Position numbers and translations under genes: made by a program. A stretch of DNA of 60,709 bases from Octopus sinensis (Eukaryota), in the NCBI RefSeq assembly GCF_006345805.1, contig NW_021832424.1:1-60709 (forward strand), in the 5' to 3' direction. Below the pieces are notes generated by a model that saw only the letters and a program-made list of their open reading frames with translations, was not told where the DNA came from and searched no databases. Shown here one piece after another: positions 1 to 60,709 of this stretch (within the stretch, counting starts at the first letter, position 1; every line of letters starts with the position of its first letter).

Positions 1-54
1 ATAGAGAAAATTTTTCTCAGATTACATAGACTTGATTGTTCATCTGAAATTTTT

Positions 55-850
55 AGTCTCTCTTCTTGTTTTCACATGTATACATGTATTTTTATTTTGT
101 ACATTAAAATCTAAATGTTATCCGTTGTGTGAATCCCTCTCTTTCTCCCCTTTCTTTCTCTCTCTTTCTCTCTTCGCTATAAGTATATATATATATATAT
201 ATATATATATAATATAGATATATATATATATATATATATATATATATATAGTATGTATGCGGAAGAATGGAGTTGGTCTTGTGGTTTGCATCTCGAGGAC
301 CGAATGTACTGAAGAAGTCACGGACACTTGAATTATGCAAGTAATTCTTTTGTTAGGACCGAAACCGAGGTATGCATTTAAGTCTGTTTTTTATTTAATT
401 TTTCATATGTCCTGCCCGCCAAATTTGGTTCTGGTGTTCGCTGAATTCTTCCTCTAGAGATTTCCCTTGTAGTTGATCGTTTATGATCTATTTCTAGCAT
501 TCTGCCGCCGGGCTACCTAGCAGGCCAGCCCTGCCAATATACACATATATTTGAATTTTCTCTGACTCCTCAGATTTTTTGAATGCTGGACTACTGTTTT
601 TAAAGTGATATTAAAATTAATATTAATTTATCTCCCTCAATTTTAAATATTTATATATATATATATATAATATATATATTATATATATATATATATATAC
701 ATATATATATATATATATTACTTATAGCGAAAGAGAGAAAGAGAGAGAAACAGAAGGGAGAAACAGAGGGATTCACACAACAGATAAAATTTTAGATTTT
801 AATGTACAAAATAAAATATACATGTATACATGTGAAACAAGAAGAGACAC
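55..850. repeat. Inverted pair of a ~130-bp repeat (55-183 and 721-850), each running into (TA)n
   Basis: Reverse complement of 721-850 aligns by eye with 55-183 (tcttcttgtt..cacatgtatacatgta..gtgtgaatccctct..cgctataag). (TA)n tracts at ~184-250 and ~652-720 lie inside the arms. Confidence 0.85.
303..378 (+). ncRNA. Type I hammerhead ribozyme motif
   Basis: aatgta-CTGAAGA-agtc...gacc-GAAAC-cgag-GTA-tgcatt. Stem I 6 bp (one G-U). Stem II has an A.C mismatch at its base and an inner gaattat/gtaattc hairpin with a GCAA loop. Confidence 0.7.
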
Positions 851-1035
851 TTTTCTAGGTTTACGCCACGCCGATAGCGTGTGTGTGTGTGTGTGTGGTG
901 TTTGTGTGTGTGTGTCTGTGTGTCTGTGTGTGTATGTGTATATATATATATATATATATATATATATATATTACTACCACACAGACACACAGACACACAC
1001 ACACATACACGCTATCGGCGTAAACCTAGAAAAGT
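849..1035. repeat. Foldback element with (GT)n/(AC)n arms around a (TA)n centre
   Basis: acttttctaggtttacgcc..gatagcgtgt at left; acacgctatcggcgtaaacctagaaaagt at right is its reverse complement. Confidence 0.8.
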
Positions 1036-1545
1036 TTTAAGGATGGCATAAAGACTAGTATGAAGTCACTGGGAATGGTTCCAAAAGATATAGAAACCCT
1101 TGCTTCGGATCGAGTTGAATGGCGAACAAAGGTGTGGAGTGGGGTGAAAGCATTTGAAGAGGCCAGGATAACACAAGTAAGACACAAAAGAGATCTAAAG
1201 AAAAATGTAACGATCGAGAAGGTGAATGACAACGACCTTTTTTGTGTGCACCGTCTGTGACAGACCATGTCTGTCATTTGCTGGCCTCAAATACCATCTG
1301 CAAACGCATGGGAAACAAACATCCACCAATTATTTGCCTATACGTCTATGCACATCTTTGAATGCAGTGTATTGCAGAATGTTTGCAAATCCAGCGGAGG
1401 CTGCATGTGACATTTTTAGGTCCACAAATAACAGAACTTATCTGCAATCTTGGTGGTTTGAATCGGAGGTGCAATCTATGTGAGTGTCTTTTCAGAACAT
1501 TCTCAGGTTTAAAAAGCCTCATCAATTGCCATGATGTTACTAAGG
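1034..1545 (+). mobile_element. RTE-clade LINE 3' fragment with two C2H2 zinc-finger remnants
   Basis: FKDGIKTSMKSLGMVPKDIETLASDRVEWRTKVWSGVKAFEEAR matches the RTE C-terminal pattern (FKD.LK..LK...W...A.DR..WR). It is followed by CTVCDRPCLSFAGLKYHLQTH and CNLCECLFRTFSGLKSL in other frames. Confidence 0.75.
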
Positions 1546-1844
1546 TGTAGGTACAGGAGGTGGTCCAACTCTGCATAAGAAGTAGACAACCATCATATAT
1601 ATACATATGTAATCAATGCGAAAAACGCAGAGGAAAAGAAAAAGAAGAAAACAGAAAACAAACAAACGTGTGGCCGTGCATTGGTAAGACACTCAGAGGA
1701 GTAGTTTTGCGTTTCGAACATAGCTCTTATTCGGAAAAAACAGAGAAGTCGAAGATGAAGGAGGATGGAAAATCGCCAACAACGACGGGCAGTTACCTTT
1801 TTGATATTTATACATACACGCACACACATACATACACACATACA

Positions 1845-1985
1845 GATAGATAGATAGATAGATAGATAGATAGATAGATAGATAGATAGATAGATAGATA
1901 GATAGATAGATAGATAGATAGACAGATAGATAGATAGATAAATAGATAGATAGATAGATAGATAGATAGATAGATAGATAGATAA
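1845..1985. repeat. (GATA)n microsatellite
   Basis: Near-pure gata tandem. Confidence 0.95.
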
Positions 1986-57665: not shown

Positions 57666-57832
57666 TGTATATATGTATGCGTATCTTTATATATGCGTGC
57701 ATACATATATGTATATATATATATATATATATATTATATATATATATATATATATATATATATATATATATATATATATATATAATATATTCAGTTCTGA
57801 ATATGCTCCGGTTAAATTTACAATTTGAAAAT

Positions 57833-57894
57833 AGGATAAAATCTTTATAAAAATTTATCAACTACTTGATAAATTCTTATAAAGATGTTATCCT
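57833..57894. repeat. AT-rich hairpin (29-bp arms, 2 mismatches) between (TA)n tracts
   Basis: aggataaaatctttataaaaatttatcaa-ctac-ttgataaattcttataaagatgttatcct. Confidence 0.75.
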
Positions 57895-59006
57895 ACTTTT
57901 AACTTATATATATATACATACATACATATATATATATATATATATATATATTATATATATATACATACATACATACTACATACATACATACATACATACA
58001 TACATACATATATATATATCATATATGTGTGTATTTACGTATGTGTATATGTGCATTTTACTTTATATTTATCATTCCTTTTCCTTTGTCAGTTTTTTCC
58101 CTTTCTTTTATAACCATTCAGCGATTCATTTTATAGCAATGACATTTTTATAATAATTTTCTTTTATTTTGTCAAATATTTGACGAAATATTCTACTTTA
58201 TTTGTTGCACAGTCGGTACGTAGTCAGCCGCCTCTATACCTACACCATTATTTCTATAATTCTATCTTTCATAGTCATTCCATCATTGTCATTCTCTCTC
58301 ATTCTCTTTCTTCGATTTTATACGTTTTATGCTTCTTTGATCTTCCTCTAGGTTTACTCTCCATTAATGGCTCTTTTGAAAATATCCTCATGATTGCTGC
58401 TGATTGGAATCGCAGTACTTATTGCTCAGATAGAAACCTCTCTGATCTGCCTACTCGAATACCATCGGTGTCTCAATAGATCTTATCTGGGTGATGATGT
58501 GATTTTCTGTCAGTTTAATTCCATTATTTATTTCATACTCTGATGTTATGTTAACCTAATTGTTGTCTTGCTATGCCATTCAATGCCCTTCCCTCCTGCC
58601 TCCTGCATTTATTATTGTATCTGCCTATGTACAAATATATTGCACCTTTAGTAGACATAATAAAATGACTGGACTAGATGTTCTTTTATATCGCATGAAT
58701 TCGCATCTTTGCATATATGATCACACACGTTAATTGATATAACAATTTCATTTGTTATTAAACGACTTTAATTGATTGCTAATTGTTATGCGTGTATTTT
58801 TTTAATACTCCGTGACGAATGGATAATTTCTGCATTCACTGTGTGATTGAAATATTTTGGATTTACTTGATTTTGTTTCCTTTTTGTACAAACACTTAGC
58901 CTGGATTTCGCGTGGAGTGCCTAACCACCTCCGTCCAGCCAGTTGCCATGATCGACCGCTAGCCACTAAAGTTTTATTTTCTCTCTCTGTTTATTTTCTC
59001 GTGTTT

Positions 59007-59044
59007 CTTTCTGTTGAAGACCGTTAGGTTCGAAACGTAAAAAG
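59007..59044 (+). ncRNA. A6U hammerhead-like motif (copy 3)
   Basis: cttt-CTGTTGA-a-GACC-gtta-GGTTC-GAAAC-GTA-aaaag, in a repeat (~58945-59113) ending in (TA)n. Confidence 0.55.
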
Positions 59045-60709
59045 CTTTCTCACCTTCCCGAGCGTTAAACAAATATGCCTGCCTCCGTCTTTTGTTTATT
59101 TTTTGTAAATTCCATATATATATATTAAATGTGTGCGTGTTTGAGAAGTCCTGTGTATATGTGTTTTGCATGTAAGTTCTGTTTTTTTGTTTTACTAATT
59201 TTCATTCTTCCTATAAAGAGAGAGATGATTTCCAATAGACCTAGACTGCCCTATGGTTGGAATTCCGATAACAAACGCGTTATCACTGGAATTTGGATAA
59301 CAAACTTGTTGCAAGTTGTACTATAGGTATTTCTCGGATATATTGGAGAGCATCCACTGATTGTATGCGTATTATCTTCTACAGACAGGCAACGTATTCG
59401 GCATTTTCGAGCGGCAATTGTGAGATTAAGGACCTCACTTGCCCTATTTTCGTAATTGCCTCCTGAGTTTAAATTAAAAAAGTTTGATGTTTGTAAATTA
59501 ACATAATGTAACGTTTAGATGTCCAAGGGAGGTCACACTTCATGTTAATAAAAGCGTTATTCTTAGCGGTATTTCGTCGTTGCGTTCTGAGTTCAAATTC
59601 CGCCGAGGTCCCCCAAAATTGCAGGCCTTGTGTCCAAATTTGAAAGCAATGTTAACATTATCCTCAAGTTTGCAAGTAACGTACCAGCGCATGGCACTGT
59701 GTGTTTACATGCGTGTGCGTGCGTGCGCGTGAGGGTGTTAATTCTTCCAGATTTTGGTCAAAATACGCTATTGCAGTAATTCGGTGATCCTCTCGAAAGT
59801 CAGTGGGAAGAGTATAGTTCAAGAGAATTACTCCTGACCCGTGGGATGCATTTAATTGGGCAGGCTGTTGATTAGCAGAAGCTCATTGTATGAAAGCAGA
59901 CAATACTCAAAGATTGTCTACAACGTTCTTATGCTTCTTCCTCACTCCTTTCTTCTGCGAATTGCGTTTTTAATATCTAAGGGAAGGGTTTTTTTTCTAT
60001 GAACCAGTCGATATCCCAAATTTTGCCAATCAGTAGAGGTACAGCAAACGGCTTGTATGAGAAGGCTCTAGCTGCCGAAGTTTTTAAACTTTGGAAAATA
60101 GCACCATTGTATGGCATAGTTTCAACAATACCGAGATATTTGTAGAATTCTAGTATTCTTTATATGGAGAGACCGTTTATGCAAAAGTCTTGAGTTCGGG
60201 AATGAGGGCCTTTGCATTCAACTAACCAATATAACCGTTTCTTTTACCCCAAATTCTGTTCTTATATACTGAAAATGTGGATGATTAATTTGGCTGTTTC
60301 TTGACATTATACATATTTCTACTATAAATATTTAGATCGTTCAAAAGTGATTCAAGGTAAGACTCCTCTGTCTTGCGGTTGTAAATCTTAACAAATGGAA
60401 TTTGTAAAGAACTGAGAGTGGATTTAGTGCCAAAATAAAAAAAAAAGGAGAGGCAGAGAGTCCTCGTGGAAAATACTCTTCAAATACGATTGTTGCCCTG
60501 ATTTTTGTTGAAGTAGCCAAGGTAGAAATATGTGTTTGCTAAATAAATTAACTATAAAACATGAACAGTAAAAGAAATGAAAGCAGTTCTGTAACTAAGA
60601 CATACTGTCAAAATGATTTTGCGGTATTAGCTTAATTTTTATAGTACAGTTTTAGTCATCAAAAGTATATGTATATGTGAGTGTGTGTATGTGTGTGTGC
60701 GCGTATGCA

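What the first reader, a model, noticed from the sequence alone, without database searches (positions are those of the whole stretch)
1..60709. Microsatellite-partitioned retroelement ecosystem: hammerhead units in (TA)n, Tx1 in (GATA)n, R4/Dong in (AAT)n
Seen: 16 HHR-like motifs from about 11 unrelated short families. Most sit in units bounded by or ending in (TA)n. Both Tx1 copies are flanked by (GATA)n, and most Dong-like pieces by (AAT)n. Established: PLE pseudo-LTRs and retrozymes carry minimal type I HHRs; Dong targets TAA repeats; some Tx1 elements target simple repeats. Inference: a diverse population of non-autonomous, self-cleaving, (TA)n-targeting retroelements mobilised by PLEs, with insertion and microsatellite growth reinforcing each other.
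Basis: partly seen in the sequence, partly recalled or inferred. Interest (0 to 1): 0.8.

Follow-up and report, generated by a model that had tools for sequence, protein, structure and literature searches.

The report
Octopus ribozyme retroelements in microsatellites
This stretch of an octopus-type genome is a graveyard of decayed retroelements, some of which carry real self-cleaving hammerhead ribozyme motifs and sit inside (TA)n repeats; each part of this pattern is already known from other animals, so it is a tidy new example, not a new kind of system.

Summary
The window is non-coding cephalopod DNA, 13.7% microsatellite, with no ORF over 260 aa. The hammerhead claim holds in part. I find 9 full motifs and one half motif from 6 families, not 16 from 11. 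All are type I with a short palindromic helix III, like the hammerheads of Penelope-like elements (PLEs). Two families carry the known U3-A8 core covariation. None reaches an Rfam gathering score. They still exceed dinucleotide shuffles (6 vs 1.1; 3 vs 0.01 with a stricter descriptor) and a reversed-sequence control (6 vs 1). One family forms a 591-bp tandem dimer with an inverted truncated copy, which is the published PLE insertion architecture. Four of six families lie in or against (TA)n. However, three ordinary SINE-like families also end in (TA)n, so (TA)n is not exclusive to ribozyme units. Both L1/Tx1-type LINE copies are embedded in (ATCT)n, but more distant relatives elsewhere end in (ATT)n or in no repeat. 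The Dong-like LINE belongs to the R2 superfamily and ends in (AAT)n here and in a distant relative. No PLE protein could be confirmed in the window. Verdict: partly supported, a new member of known kinds.

The parts
25364..25651 (-). R1: inverted, 5'-truncated copy of the 591-bp unit. It breaks at the tip of the helix II hairpin of the hammerhead.
   Evidence: Self-BLAST: 25364-25651 is the reverse complement of 26113-26398 at 99.3%. Sequence read.
25652..26742 (+). R1: tandem dimer of a 591-bp non-coding unit (25656-26153 matches 26247-26747 at 96.8%). The second unit is cut short where (TA)n begins.
   Evidence: No ORF.
25756..25855 (+). R1 hammerhead a. Helix I 6 bp, core CUGAAGA, helix II a 69-nt hairpin, GAAA, palindromic helix III ACGUACGU, H17 = C at 25849. 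Predicted cleavage between 25849 and 25850.
   Evidence: Descriptor hits. The monomer fold keeps helices I and II; the dimer forms an intermolecular helix III (-52.6 vs 2 x -20.1 kcal/mol).
26346..26445 (+). R1 hammerhead b, identical to a. Predicted cleavage between 26439 and 26440, so the two sites are 590 nt apart.
26743..27028 (.). (TA)n array abutting the right end of R1.
   Evidence: TRF.
251..646 (+). R2: 396-bp non-coding unit with (TA)n on both sides (184-250 and 647-718). It lies at the centre of an inverted repeat, 55-183 against 719-851.
   Evidence: Self-BLAST: 55-250 against 851-652 at 91.6%. Sequence.
302..379 (+). R2 hammerhead. Helix I 7 bp, CUGAAGA, helix II 45 nt with an A10.1/C11.1 mismatch, helix III ACCGAGGU, H17 = A at 372.
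   Evidence: Descriptor score 10. Folds.
33547..33770 (+). R3: 224-bp unit between (TA)n 33515-33546 and (AT)n 33771-33794. The left array is the 3' tail of SINE C copy 33370-33514.
33677..33720 (+). R3 hammerhead. Core UUGAAAA (U3-A8 covariant), helix II GGUC/GACC, helix III ACCGGU, H17 = A at 33714.
   Evidence: Rfam HH9 at 22.9 bits, E = 0.0012 on the unit alone. Own model 33.2 bits. Folds.
51417..52259 (-). R5: candidate unit between (TA)n 51041-51416 and (TA)n 52260-402. The upstream boundary is not established.
51482..51524 (-). R5 hammerhead. Core UUGAUAA (U3-A8), helix III ACUAGU, H17 = U at 51488. It lies 67 nt from the (TA)n array.
   Evidence: Own model 21.0 bits. Sequence. Folds.
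13918..13974 (+). R4 hammerhead relic. Helix I 6 bp, core CAGAGGA (U4 changed to A, probably inactive), helix III ACCAUGGU. Not next to (TA)n. A partial second copy lies at 13581-13672.
   Evidence: (17.0 bits).
5945..6104 (+). P2 copy a. A 160-bp unit that always follows (AAT)n(AAC)n and ends in (AATGTAAAT)n. It holds a PLE-type minimal hammerhead at 6001-6046, with an extra A after A9 and helix III ACGU.
   Evidence: Features match the rules in PMC4209133.
47107..47265 (+). P2 copy b. Mismatches in helix II and at the first pair of helix I.
46572..46718 (-). P2 copy c. A9 changed to G.
21395..22927 (-). LINE X copy 1. L1/Tx1-type, 5'-truncated, holding the RT C-terminal part and zf-RVT with frameshifts. 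Its 3' end is ..GTGGCCAATAAAGAAAC followed by (ATCT)n. (TAGA)n lies on both sides (21189-21394 and 22817-23084).
   Evidence: Pfam zf-RVT. Homologues at 72-78% carry RVT_1 and zf-RVT. Nearest solved structures are human L1 ORF2p. Junctions.
20848..21188 (-). LINE X copy 2. 3'-UTR only, with a different 5' truncation point and the same 3' junction with (ATCT)n. Flanked by (AGAT)n 20546-20847 and (TAGA)n 21189-21367.
36110..36807 (-). Dong-like (R2-superfamily) LINE, C-terminal domain and 3' UTR. In sense it ends ..AAGTCAAACATAG followed by (AAT)n, which is the (ATT)n array at 36032-36109 on the plus strand.
   Evidence: Architecture of full-length relatives. The relative L006 is flanked on both sides by (AAT)n.
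36838..37439 (+). Second Dong-like piece, matching residues about 730-930 of full-length relatives. It lies head-to-head with the first and has no (AAT)n flank.
   Evidence: tblastn.
35730..35991 (-). Third Dong-like piece (CCHC region), lying between (AAT)n arrays.
   Evidence: tblastn.
34423..35735 (+). (AAT)n cluster holding three non-coding units: P4-long 34503-35042, P3-long 35194-35376 and P4-short 35484-35713. Units of one family share a 3' end and differ at the 5' end. Each is followed by (AAT)n.
7385..7555 (-). SINE B, tRNA-derived. It ends ..GAAAGAAGCCYGYCG followed by (TA)n as a 3' tail only. Other copies: 29612-29770 (-), 14340-14500 (+), 32544-32641 (-, where the tail turns into (CTAT)n).
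41754..42130 (+). SINE C, about 380 bp with a tRNA-like head and a (TA)n-type 3' tail. Other copies: 29432-29584 (+), 33370-33514 (+), 27510-27680 (-). The copy at 29432 lies tail-to-tail with a SINE B on one shared (TA)n.
23456..24159 (-). SINE A, in a 184-bp head-to-tail array of 3.6 units. Its last ~50 nt match the 3' end of LINE X. Other copies: 7807-8023 (-, (TA)n tail), 46139-46352 (+, no tail), 24314-24555 (+, (ATT)n tail at 24556-24867).
37440..37680 (-). Possible PLE reverse-transcriptase remnant (FLDALITR..IYRKPTFIGRYLNFNSYHP..KRG..L..RA). Recognised by eye only.
   Evidence: Translation. Pfam and the homologue search found nothing.

Best explanation
The window is intergenic octopod DNA built up by layered retroelement insertions that favour simple repeats.

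(1) Ribozyme units. Six families of short non-coding sequence carry PLE-type minimal type I hammerheads. These have a short palindromic helix III, so two copies must pair to cleave; two families have U3-A8 cores. I read them as PLE-derived: either retrozyme-like non-autonomous units (R1, a 591-bp tandem dimer whose two cleavage sites would release a 590-nt RNA) or solo terminal fragments of 5'-truncated PLEs (the single-motif units). The GIY-YIG endonuclease and RT of a PLE elsewhere in the genome inserted them into existing (TA)n tracts, which is a known PLE preference.

(2) Source of the (TA)n tracts. Many of these tracts are the 3' tails of ordinary tRNA-derived SINEs (B, C) and of a third family. 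The ribozyme units therefore land in microsatellites that other retroelements seeded.

(3) LINE repeats. The LINE-associated repeats are strand-specific 3' tails that also serve as landing sites through tail/target annealing during target-primed reverse transcription. A Dong-like R2-superfamily LINE and several small units use (AAT)n in sense. An L1/Tx1-type LINE and its partner SINE A use (ATT)n in most copies and (ATCT)n in the subfamily present here.

Shown: the motifs, their folds, their excess over chance, the architectures, the flanks, and the domain content of relatives. Inferred: self-cleavage, mobilisation by PLEs, and the direction of cause between insertion and repeat growth.
For: Organism: relatives of the LINE ORF are named from Argonauta hians, Octopus sinensis and O. 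bimaculoides.

Hammerheads: descriptor hits and excess over shuffles and the reversed control. Own covariance model gives 33.2, 21.0 and 17.0 bits against <=10.5 bits in 46 kb of other loci. Rfam HH9 gives a sub-threshold hit at 33669-33733. MFE folds keep helices I and II with an open core, and cofolds form an intermolecular helix III with 7-14 kcal/mol gain for R1-R5.

Known PLE-hammerhead traits: palindromic stem III, U3-A8, an extra nucleotide after A9, and mostly single motifs from truncated PLEs (PMC4209133; PMC6765202).

Architecture: R1 is a tandem plus an inverted 5'-truncated copy, matching the PLE scheme of PMC8557442. That paper also reports a (TA)n insertion bias for Naiad PLEs and a microsatellite bias hypothesised for Neptune PLEs.

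(TA)n proximity: 3 of 6 families lie within 70 bp of a (TA)n array. Only 6.6% of non-array bases do, giving a binomial p of about 0.005 by my arithmetic.

Insertion into existing (TA)n: R2 splits the centre of a 91.6% palindrome, and R3 splits a SINE C tail.

SINE tails.

LINE X: junctions; L1-like RT.

Dong-like: no APE domain, central RVT_1, a CCHC motif and a C-terminal domain in 1050-1200-aa relatives. The nearest solved structures are R2 proteins. Both flanks are (AAT)n in L006.

Genus context: Dong-R4, L1-Tx1 and 31 recently active Penelope-like families are annotated in O. vulgaris (PMC13282606).
Against: - No hammerhead reaches an Rfam gathering score.
- Only R1 is fully canonical. R2, R4 and all P2 copies carry changes expected to weaken or abolish cleavage.
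- Apart from R1 (two identical motifs) and P2 (three decayed copies), each family has a single motif in the window, so there is almost no covariation evidence.
- No PLE ORF could be confirmed by any tool.
- Two of six families are not next to (TA)n, and n = 6 is small.
- (TA)n makes up 4.3% of the window, and AT-rich sequence may simply tolerate insertions.
- The two LINE X copies might stem from one local duplication.
- No second copy of any ribozyme unit could be retrieved from public collections, so unit ends and target preference rest on one locus each.
Confidence: 0.6

Rival explanations
1. The ribozyme units are about 11 independent, self-propagating non-autonomous families that specifically target (TA)n. 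Tx1 owns (GATA)n and Dong owns (AAT)n, giving a clean partition, and insertion and repeat growth feed each other.
For: - Six mutually unrelated hammerhead families (one search shows no cross-similarity).
- R1 is a tandem repeat without an ORF, as in animal retrozymes (PMC7229834).
- Both LINE X copies lie in (ATCT)n with the same junction.
- Every (AAT)n-associated unit is in the same orientation.
Against: - I find 6 families, not 11.
- Five of the six occur as single or decayed motifs. The literature mostly ascribes such motifs to truncated PLEs (PMC4209133; the bioRxiv preprint).
- (TA)n also tails SINE B, SINE C, family F6 and one SINE A copy.
- One hammerhead family (P2) sits after (AAT)n, not (TA)n.
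- LINE X relatives and the partner SINE use (ATT)n, (TA)n or no repeat.
- Repeat growth was not tested.
Confidence: 0.2
2. The microsatellites next to the elements are only their own 3' tails, made by the reverse transcriptase, as poly(A) is for Alu. There is no targeting. Clusters arise because tails expand and recombine.
For: - SINE B, SINE C and F6 have (TA)n at the 3' end only, with ordinary 5' flanks.
- The tRNA-like unit P1 has a 3' (AAT)n only.
- Dong-like copy A shows (AAT)n at its 3' end only.
Against: - R2 and R3 have (TA)n on both sides, and their outer flanks show one pre-existing tract.
- P4-long and P3-long, the two LINE X copies and the L006 Dong-like copy have the same repeat on both sides.
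- SINE B and SINE C lie tail-to-tail on one (TA)n.
- Hammerhead units are not expected to make (TA)n tails, because PLE ends are described as 30-40-bp extensions.
Confidence: 0.15
3. The hammerhead-like motifs are chance matches or long-dead relics, and their closeness to (TA)n reflects AT-rich, hairpin-prone sequence and not biology.
For: - No Rfam gathering hit.
- Several cores are mutated.
- Loose box co-occurrence gives a modest excess, 14 against 6.0 +/- 2.3, and the excess includes repeated family copies.
- The window is full of palindromes and microsatellite hairpins.
Against: - Structured descriptors give 6 hits against 1.1 and 3 against 0.01 in shuffles, and 6 against 1 and 3 against 0 in the reversed window.
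- Covariance-model scores are far above those in 46 kb of control loci.
- Every motif has the palindromic helix III typical of PLE hammerheads.
- Two identical canonical copies lie exactly one repeat unit apart.
Confidence: 0.05

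Closest known systems
Minimal type I hammerhead ribozymes of Penelope-like elements (Cervera & de la Pena 2014, PMC4209133; Lunse, Weinberg & Breaker 2017)
   Same: Type I topology. Helix III is short and palindromic, implying an active dimer. The U3-A8 covariation occurs in two families, and an extra nucleotide between A9 and 10.1 occurs in the P2 family. Helix I is 4-7 bp. Sequences differ widely between families. Motifs are mostly single, with occasional pairs on opposite strands.
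   Different: No PLE ORF lies next to any of them here. Helix II is unusually long in R1 (69 nt) and R2 (45 nt). Cephalopods are not among the animals examined in the papers I read.
Animal non-LTR retrozymes (Cervera & de la Pena 2020, PMC7229834; Li, Clavereau & Pollet 2026 preprint)
   Same: R1 is a head-to-tail repeat of a low-GC non-coding unit. Each unit has one type I hammerhead, so cleavage would release a unit-length RNA able to circularise.
   Different: The R1 unit is 591 bp, against the usual 150-450 bp. There are only two units plus an inverted partial copy. The R1 hammerhead is of the minimal PLE kind, without recognisable loop-loop contacts. The other five families are not tandem. 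A preference for (TA)n is not mentioned in those papers.
Microsatellite insertion bias of PLEs: (TA)n for Naiad, bias hypothesised for Neptune (Arkhipova 2006; Craig et al. 2021, PMC8557442)
   Same: Units lie inside (TA)n with no discernible target-site duplication. R1 shows the partial tandem plus the inverted 5'-truncated copy.
   Different: Naiads are reported to lack canonical hammerheads, whereas these units have them. The PLE clade responsible here is unknown.
Dong / R4-clade LINEs specific for (TAA)n, and other microsatellite-specific LINEs such as Kibi, Koshi, Waldo and Mino (Kojima & Fujiwara 2004; cited from my own knowledge)
   Same: Relatives have an R2-superfamily architecture: no APE domain, a central RT, a CCHC motif and a C-terminal nuclease-like domain. 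The element ends in (AAT)n in sense, with the repeat on both sides in a 60%-identical relative. Dong-R4 families are annotated in O. vulgaris (PMC13282606).
   Different: Placement in the R4 clade was not tested by phylogeny. The C-terminal domain matches no Pfam family and shows no sequence match to the R2 nuclease in the PDB.
Schistosoma Sm-alpha / Sj-alpha SINE-like elements with a hammerhead (Ferbeyre 1998; Laha 2000)
   Same: The P2 hammerhead unit follows a tRNA-like head (P1) in two of three copies. This would make a tRNA-promoted SINE that carries a hammerhead.
   Different: P1 also occurs alone with its own (AAT)n tail. The link between P1 and P2 runs through a microsatellite and may be a secondary insertion. 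All three P2 hammerheads are damaged.

Membership tests
Hammerhead ribozyme, type I | Conserved core C3-U4-G5-A6-N7-G8-A9 ... G12-A13-A14 ... U16.1-H17. | tested here: met
   Fully met by 25756-25855 and 26346-26445. Met with the documented U3-A8 covariation by 33677-33720 and 51482-51524. Not met by 13918-13974 (U4A) or by one P2 copy (A9G).
Hammerhead ribozyme, type I | Three helices around the core, with helix I open and helices II and III closed. | tested here: met
   Descriptor results. MFE and dimer folds for R1-R5. The P2 MFE prefers a competing hairpin.
Hammerhead ribozyme, type I | Score at or above the Rfam gathering threshold for a hammerhead family. | tested here: not met
   No hits at gathering level. 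The best hit is HH9 at 22.9 bits against 52.
Hammerhead ribozyme, type I | Site-specific self-cleavage after H17. | not testable with these tools
   Needs in-vitro transcription of monomer and dimer constructs.
PLE-type minimal hammerhead | Very short, palindromic helix III/loop 3, allowing an active dimer. | tested here: met
   Helix III sequences are ACGUACGU, ACCGGU, ACUAGU, ACCAUGGU, ACGU and ACCGAGGU (near-palindromic). Cofolds form an intermolecular helix III.
Animal non-LTR retrozyme | Head-to-tail repeats of a non-coding unit, each with one type I hammerhead. | tested here: inconclusive
   R1 has two units of 591 bp with identical hammerheads 590 nt apart. The other families are single units.
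Animal non-LTR retrozyme | Expressed as unit-length linear and circular RNA. | not testable with these tools
   No transcript data are available here.
Penelope-like element (autonomous) | An ORF with a telomerase-like RT and a GIY-YIG endonuclease. | tested here: not met
   No RVT or GIY-YIG hit in any PLE-like frame. The homologue search on the candidate fragment at 37440-37680 (-) was empty. The fragment was recognised by eye only.
Penelope-like element (insertion architecture) | A partial tandem forming pseudo-LTRs, often with an inverted 5'-truncated copy upstream, and a hammerhead in the repeat. | tested here: met
   R1 at 25364-26742, compared with the Fig. 2 legend of PMC8557442.
Dong / R4 clade | RLE-type LINE architecture: no APE domain, a central RT, a CCHC motif and a C-terminal nuclease. 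| tested here: met
   Relatives of 1050-1200 aa have RVT_1 at about 400-770, a weak zf-RVT/CCHC in five of seven, and the window's domain at the C-terminus, with no Exo_endo_phos. The nearest solved structures are R2 proteins. The nuclease nature of the C-terminal domain is inferred from a PD..D..K-like motif only (one search gave no match).
Dong / R4 clade | Insertion into (TAA)n. | tested here: met
   The window copy ends in (AAT)n in sense. The relative L006 has (AAT)n on both sides.
Dong / R4 clade | Phylogenetic placement of the RT within R4, as opposed to R2, HERO, NeSL or CRE. | not tested
   No reference set was at hand, and the window copies lack the RT.
Tx1 clade | APE endonuclease, L1-like RT and a C-terminal zinc-binding domain. 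| tested here: inconclusive
   RVT_1 and zf-RVT are present in relatives. The RT is nearest to human L1 ORF2p. No copy retrieved reaches the N-terminal endonuclease.
Tx1 clade | Phylogenetic placement in Tx1 and not L1 proper. | not tested
   Context only: 'L1-Tx1' families are annotated in O. vulgaris.
Tx1 clade (site-specific members) | The same target sequence at all copies of the family. | tested here: not met
   The repeat is (ATCT)n at both window copies. It is (ATT)n at L003 and L001, and there is no repeat at L002 and L005. The partner SINE A has variable tails.

The most novel reading that the evidence does not exclude
In octopus genomes each retroelement lineage may carry a strand-specific microsatellite 'address'. 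Candidates seen here are (TA)n, (TAA)n, (TTA)n and (ATCT)n, and perhaps (TATG)n for the second RLE-type LINE. Under this reading, tRNA-derived SINEs with (UA)n tails and the hammerhead units would share one (TA)n-directed machinery, possibly the PLE endonuclease and RT. That would make PLEs drivers of SINE-type elements and a main cause of the genome's microsatellite load. The unit tRNA-head-(AAT)n-P2 would then be a cephalopod counterpart of the schistosome hammerhead SINEs.
Probability: 0.15. Interest if true: 0.65.

Novelty: new member of a known kind. Interest (0 to 1): 0.4.

Why it matters
Hammerhead-bearing PLE derivatives and retrozyme-like repeats have been described in cnidarians, mussels, flatworms, insects and amphibians. 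None of the papers I could read describes them in cephalopods. Octopus genomes are unusually rich in SINEs, LINEs and simple repeats. This window shows in miniature how repeats seeded by SINE and LINE tails become landing sites for further elements, including ribozyme-carrying ones. If the pattern holds genome-wide, it would help explain both the simple-repeat load and the nested structure of octopus intergenic DNA. It would also give a set of natural hammerhead core variants (U3-A8, long helix II) to test. Every ingredient is already established elsewhere, so the value lies in annotation and in a testable genome-wide hypothesis, not in a new mechanism.

Tried and rejected
1. My first strict regex (CUGANGA, helix II <=45 nt, contiguous pairs) found nothing. 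This nearly led me to reject the claim. It failed because of long helix II inserts, U3-A8 cores and a short helix I.
2. Rfam at gathering level found nothing. At E<=10 the list is swamped by microsatellite hairpins that mimic mir-297, mir-3149 and similar families; these are artefacts.
3. Motifs examined and rejected as hammerheads:
   - 20234-20277 (no helix III, no G10.1-C11.1, 11.4 bits, within the noise range).
   - 19003-19095 (-), whose helix I is all wobble pairs.
   - 38145, a diverged SINE A.
   - The family at 5338(-)/32735/59032, which is a (TA)n-tailed element with 'GAAGA..CGAAAC' but no hammerhead core.
   - The SINE A antisense 'CGAAAC GATGAAAG'.
4. ARAGORN finds no tRNA genes. 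The tRNA-like heads are degenerate SINE heads.
5. Pfam on about 6,000 residues of pooled reading-frame segments found only zf-RVT and mariner domains.
6. The homologue search with the PLE-like fragment returned nothing, and Pfam found nothing.
7. A look-up of the window's own 244-aa ORF found no record, so no more sequence of this genome could be fetched.
8. The one metagenome scan, using the R1 hammerhead 20-mer, returned a single unrelated soil contig (L007), a chance match.
9. The LINE fragment at 1030-1500 with 'DRVEWR' and C2H2 fingers is not a copy of the L1/Tx1-type LINE (one search found only one coding copy). From memory it looks CR1-like; Pfam shows only weak zinc-finger hits.

Full report
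WHAT THE WINDOW IS

The window is 60.7 kb at 36% GC with no ORF longer than 260 aa. Repeats of period 6 or less cover 8,338 bp (13.7%). They include 28 (TA)n arrays, 9 (GATA)n, 24 (AC)n and 10 (AAT)n arrays. Relatives of the one well-preserved LINE reading frame are named from Argonauta hians, Octopus sinensis and O. bimaculoides, so this is octopod DNA. A recent O. vulgaris annotation lists Dong-R4, L1-Tx1, CR1, RTE and Hero LINEs, about 900 SINE families and 31 recently active Penelope-like families (PMC13282606).

THE HAMMERHEAD OBSERVATION

Rfam finds nothing at gathering thresholds. At E<=10 its output is dominated by microsatellite hairpins that mimic miRNA families. My first strict pattern also found nothing. 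A sub-threshold Rfam HH9 hit at 33669-33733 (22.9 bits, gathering score 52) showed why. That motif has a U3-A8 core and a six-base palindromic helix III.

Reading the context of every CGAAAC site and relaxing the descriptor gave these motifs:
- R1: two identical, fully canonical hammerheads at 25756-25855 and 26346-26445. Helix I is 6 bp, the core is CUGAAGA, helix II is a 69-nt hairpin, helix III is ACGUACGU and H17 is C.
- R2: 302-379, with an A10.1/C11.1 mismatch and helix III ACCGAGGU.
- R3: 33677-33720, with core UUGAAAA and helix III ACCGGU.
- R4: 13918-13974, with core CAGAGGA and helix III ACCAUGGU.

I built a covariance model from 60 synthetic sequences that encode only the consensus. 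Run without filters, it added R5 at 51482-51524 on the minus strand (core UUGAUAA, helix III ACUAGU, 21.0 bits). It scored R3 at 33.2 bits and R4 at 17.0 bits. In 46 kb of other loci the best score was 10.5 bits.

After reading Cervera & de la Pena 2014 I re-examined a three-copy family, P2, at 6001-6046, about 47162-47207 and about 46601-46646 (minus). It has a canonical core, one extra A after A9, a G10.1-C11.1 pair, helix III ACGU and a 5-bp helix I. Those are the published traits of PLE minimal hammerheads. The alignment of the three copies implies an intact ancestor, and each copy now carries one or two disabling changes.

The total is six families: nine full motifs plus a half motif in the inverted R1 copy. 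'Tried and rejected' lists the look-alikes.

IS IT MORE THAN CHANCE?

Yes.
- Loose descriptor: 6 hits at score >=7 against 1.14 +/- 0.98 in 200 dinucleotide shuffles, and 4 against 0.38 at score >=9.
- The reversed, uncomplemented window keeps the repeats and local composition. It gives 1 hit against 6.
- The PLE-type descriptor requires G10.1-C11.1, allows an optional extra nucleotide, and requires a palindromic helix III, helix I of at least 4 bp and helix II of at least 4 bp. It gives 3 hits against 0.01 in shuffles and 0 in the reversed window.
- Minimum-free-energy folds of R1-R5 keep helices I and II around an open core. Two-strand folds form an intermolecular helix III with a gain of 7-14 kcal/mol. 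This fits the dimer model for PLE hammerheads (PMC6765202). P2 prefers a competing hairpin.
- Self-cleavage itself is not shown.

ARCHITECTURE AND (TA)n

R1 is a head-to-tail dimer of a 591-bp non-coding unit (96.8% identity). A 288-bp copy in inverted orientation precedes it and breaks at the tip of the hammerhead's helix II hairpin. The second unit runs into a 286-bp (TA)n array. The predicted cleavage sites are 590 nt apart. This matches the published scheme for PLE insertions: a partial tandem with a hammerhead in each repeat, and often an inverted 5'-truncated copy upstream (PMC8557442).

R2 (251-646) has (TA)n on both sides. Outside those arrays the flanks 55-183 and 719-851 are inverted repeats of each other at 91.6%. 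The unit therefore split the (TA)n centre of an existing palindrome.

R3 (33547-33770) has (TA)n on both sides, and the left array is the 3' tail of a SINE C copy. The unit therefore split a SINE tail.

The R5 hammerhead lies 67 nt from a 375-bp (TA)n region, and another array lies 740 bp upstream.

R4 and P2 are not next to (TA)n.

Three of the six families lie within 70 bp of a (TA)n array. Only 6.6% of non-array bases do so, which gives a binomial p of about 0.005 by my arithmetic. A (TA)n insertion bias is already reported for Naiad PLEs, and a microsatellite bias has been hypothesised for Neptune PLEs.

(TA)n IS NOT PRIVATE TO RIBOZYME UNITS

Three other families end in (TA)n and have ordinary 5' flanks:
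- SINE B, tRNA-derived.
- SINE C, about 380 bp with a tRNA-like head.
- A third family with three copies, F6.

One SINE A copy does the same. A SINE B and a SINE C lie tail-to-tail on a single (TA)n at 29432-29770. By my count, about half of the 28 arrays abut an identifiable element end. The simplest reading has two steps: SINE tails seed (TA)n, and PLE-type units then land in it.

THE L1/Tx1-TYPE LINE AND (GATA)n

The frame at 21738-22927 (minus) carries zf-RVT. Its relatives carry RVT_1 and zf-RVT, and their RT is nearest to human L1 ORF2p among solved structures. A second copy, 3'-UTR only, lies at 20848-21188. The two copies have different 5' truncation points and the same 3' junction..GTGGC(C/T)AATAAAGAAAC followed by (ATCT)n. 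Each is embedded in (ATCT)n on both sides.

More distant relatives (50-78% identity) fetched from other contigs behave differently. Two end ..TTGTGGC(C/T)AATAAAAGAAAT followed by (ATT)n (L003, L001), and two end in no repeat (L002, L005). SINE A shares the last ~50 nt with this LINE, and its tails are (TA)n, (ATT)n or none. The (GATA)n link is therefore at most a subfamily trait. Tx1 placement, as opposed to L1, was not tested.

THE DONG-LIKE LINE AND (AAT)n

The 265-aa frame at 36241-37035 (minus) has a C-terminal domain found in thousands of proteins. Full-length relatives of 1050-1200 aa have no APE domain, a central RVT_1, a weak CCHC/zf-RVT in five of the seven scanned, and this domain at the C-terminus. 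Their nearest solved structures are R2 proteins, with no L1 hit. This is the R2-superfamily architecture, which is compatible with R4/Dong, but clade placement was not tested.

In sense orientation the window copy ends ..AAGTCAAACATAG followed by (AAT)n. A 60%-identical relative on an unrelated 1.4-Mb contig ends ..AAAGCAAAACAT followed by (AAT)n and also has (AAT)n at its truncated 5' end.

tblastn with the full-length relatives shows three pieces in the window: 36306-36807 (minus), 36838-37439 (plus) and 35730-35991 (minus).

Several non-coding units end in (AAT)n in the same orientation. P4 and P3 each have two copies that share a 3' end and differ at the 5' end. The tRNA-like unit P1 has three copies. 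Several of these units have the repeat on both sides. By contrast, the L1/Tx1-type family and a SINE A-like copy carry (ATT)n in sense. The association is therefore strand-specific.

WHAT COULD NOT BE SHOWN

No PLE protein was confirmed. A fragment at 37440-37680 (minus) reads FLD..IYRKPT..YLNF.S.HP..K.G..L..RA. I recognise this from memory as the region after the RT in PLEs. Pfam and the homologue search found nothing. No further copy of any ribozyme unit could be retrieved, so unit boundaries, copy number and covariation remain open. I could not test whether the single-motif units are independent non-autonomous families or solo terminal fragments of 5'-truncated PLEs, which is the literature's default reading. 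The proposed feedback between insertion and repeat growth is plausible and has precedent, but it cannot be tested in one window.

VERDICT

The ribozyme motifs are real and of PLE type, and they are associated with (TA)n. The LINE-repeat links are real, but they are strand-specific tails and targets and do not amount to a clean partition. Each component is a known phenomenon, so I rate this a new member of known kinds, with moderate interest (0.4).

Noticed in passing
window 23456-24126: SINE A forms a head-to-tail array of 3.6 units of 184 bp at 85% identity, so a SINE is behaving like a small satellite. The units abut with no tail between them.
   Followed up: partly
window 849-1035; 4987-5249; 13440-13824; 55-851: Several long palindromes are centred on (TA)n or on (GT)n(TA)n(AC)n. 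This suggests hairpin- or cruciform-mediated inverted duplication at (TA)n tracts.
   Followed up: no
window 14466-17680 (+): A second, different RLE-type LINE, with 'LDLGNAYGSIPH' (weak RVT_1) and 'RSDVVLW..IELTVPWEE..RK'. It lies between (TATG)n 14155-14269 and (GTAT)n 18083-18243, which are the same repeat in the same orientation. This may be another microsatellite-specific family.
   Followed up: partly
window 29432-29770: A SINE C (+) and a SINE B (-) lie tail-to-tail and share one 27-bp (TA)n array, as if one had inserted into the other's tail.
   Followed up: partly
window 5746-6104 and 46572-46835 (-): The tRNA-like head P1, an internal (AAT)n(AAC)n tract and the hammerhead-bearing P2 occur together twice. 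P1 also stands alone at 44932-45006 with its own short (AAT)n tail. This could be a composite tRNA-headed SINE carrying a hammerhead, or a secondary insertion.
   Followed up: partly
window 56576-57520 (+) and 39089-39448 (-): Decayed mariner-type transposase copies. Pfam finds HTH_48 and Transposase_1 for the first; the second was recognised by eye.
   Followed up: partly
window 43658-43869 and 44497-44709: A 212-bp inverted repeat at 96% identity encloses about 630 bp. It may be the terminal inverted repeats of a young DNA transposon or a foldback element.
   Followed up: no
window 1030-1500 (+): The 3' part of another LINE ('DRVEWR' followed by two C2H2-like fingers), which looks CR1-like from memory. 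About 350 bp further on comes (AGAT)n 1844-1984. That is the opposite strand of the repeat relative to the L1/Tx1-type copies.
   Followed up: partly
window 32480-32641 (-): One SINE B copy has a tail that starts GTATAT and continues as (CTAT)n. A (TA)n tail can therefore sit directly next to, or turn into, a (GATA)n-type array.
   Followed up: no
protein hits: Octopus-type LINE proteins appear in public records named as bacterial ('MAG... Herbaspirillum sp.', 'Escherichia coli'). This points to host-DNA contamination in those assemblies.
   Followed up: no
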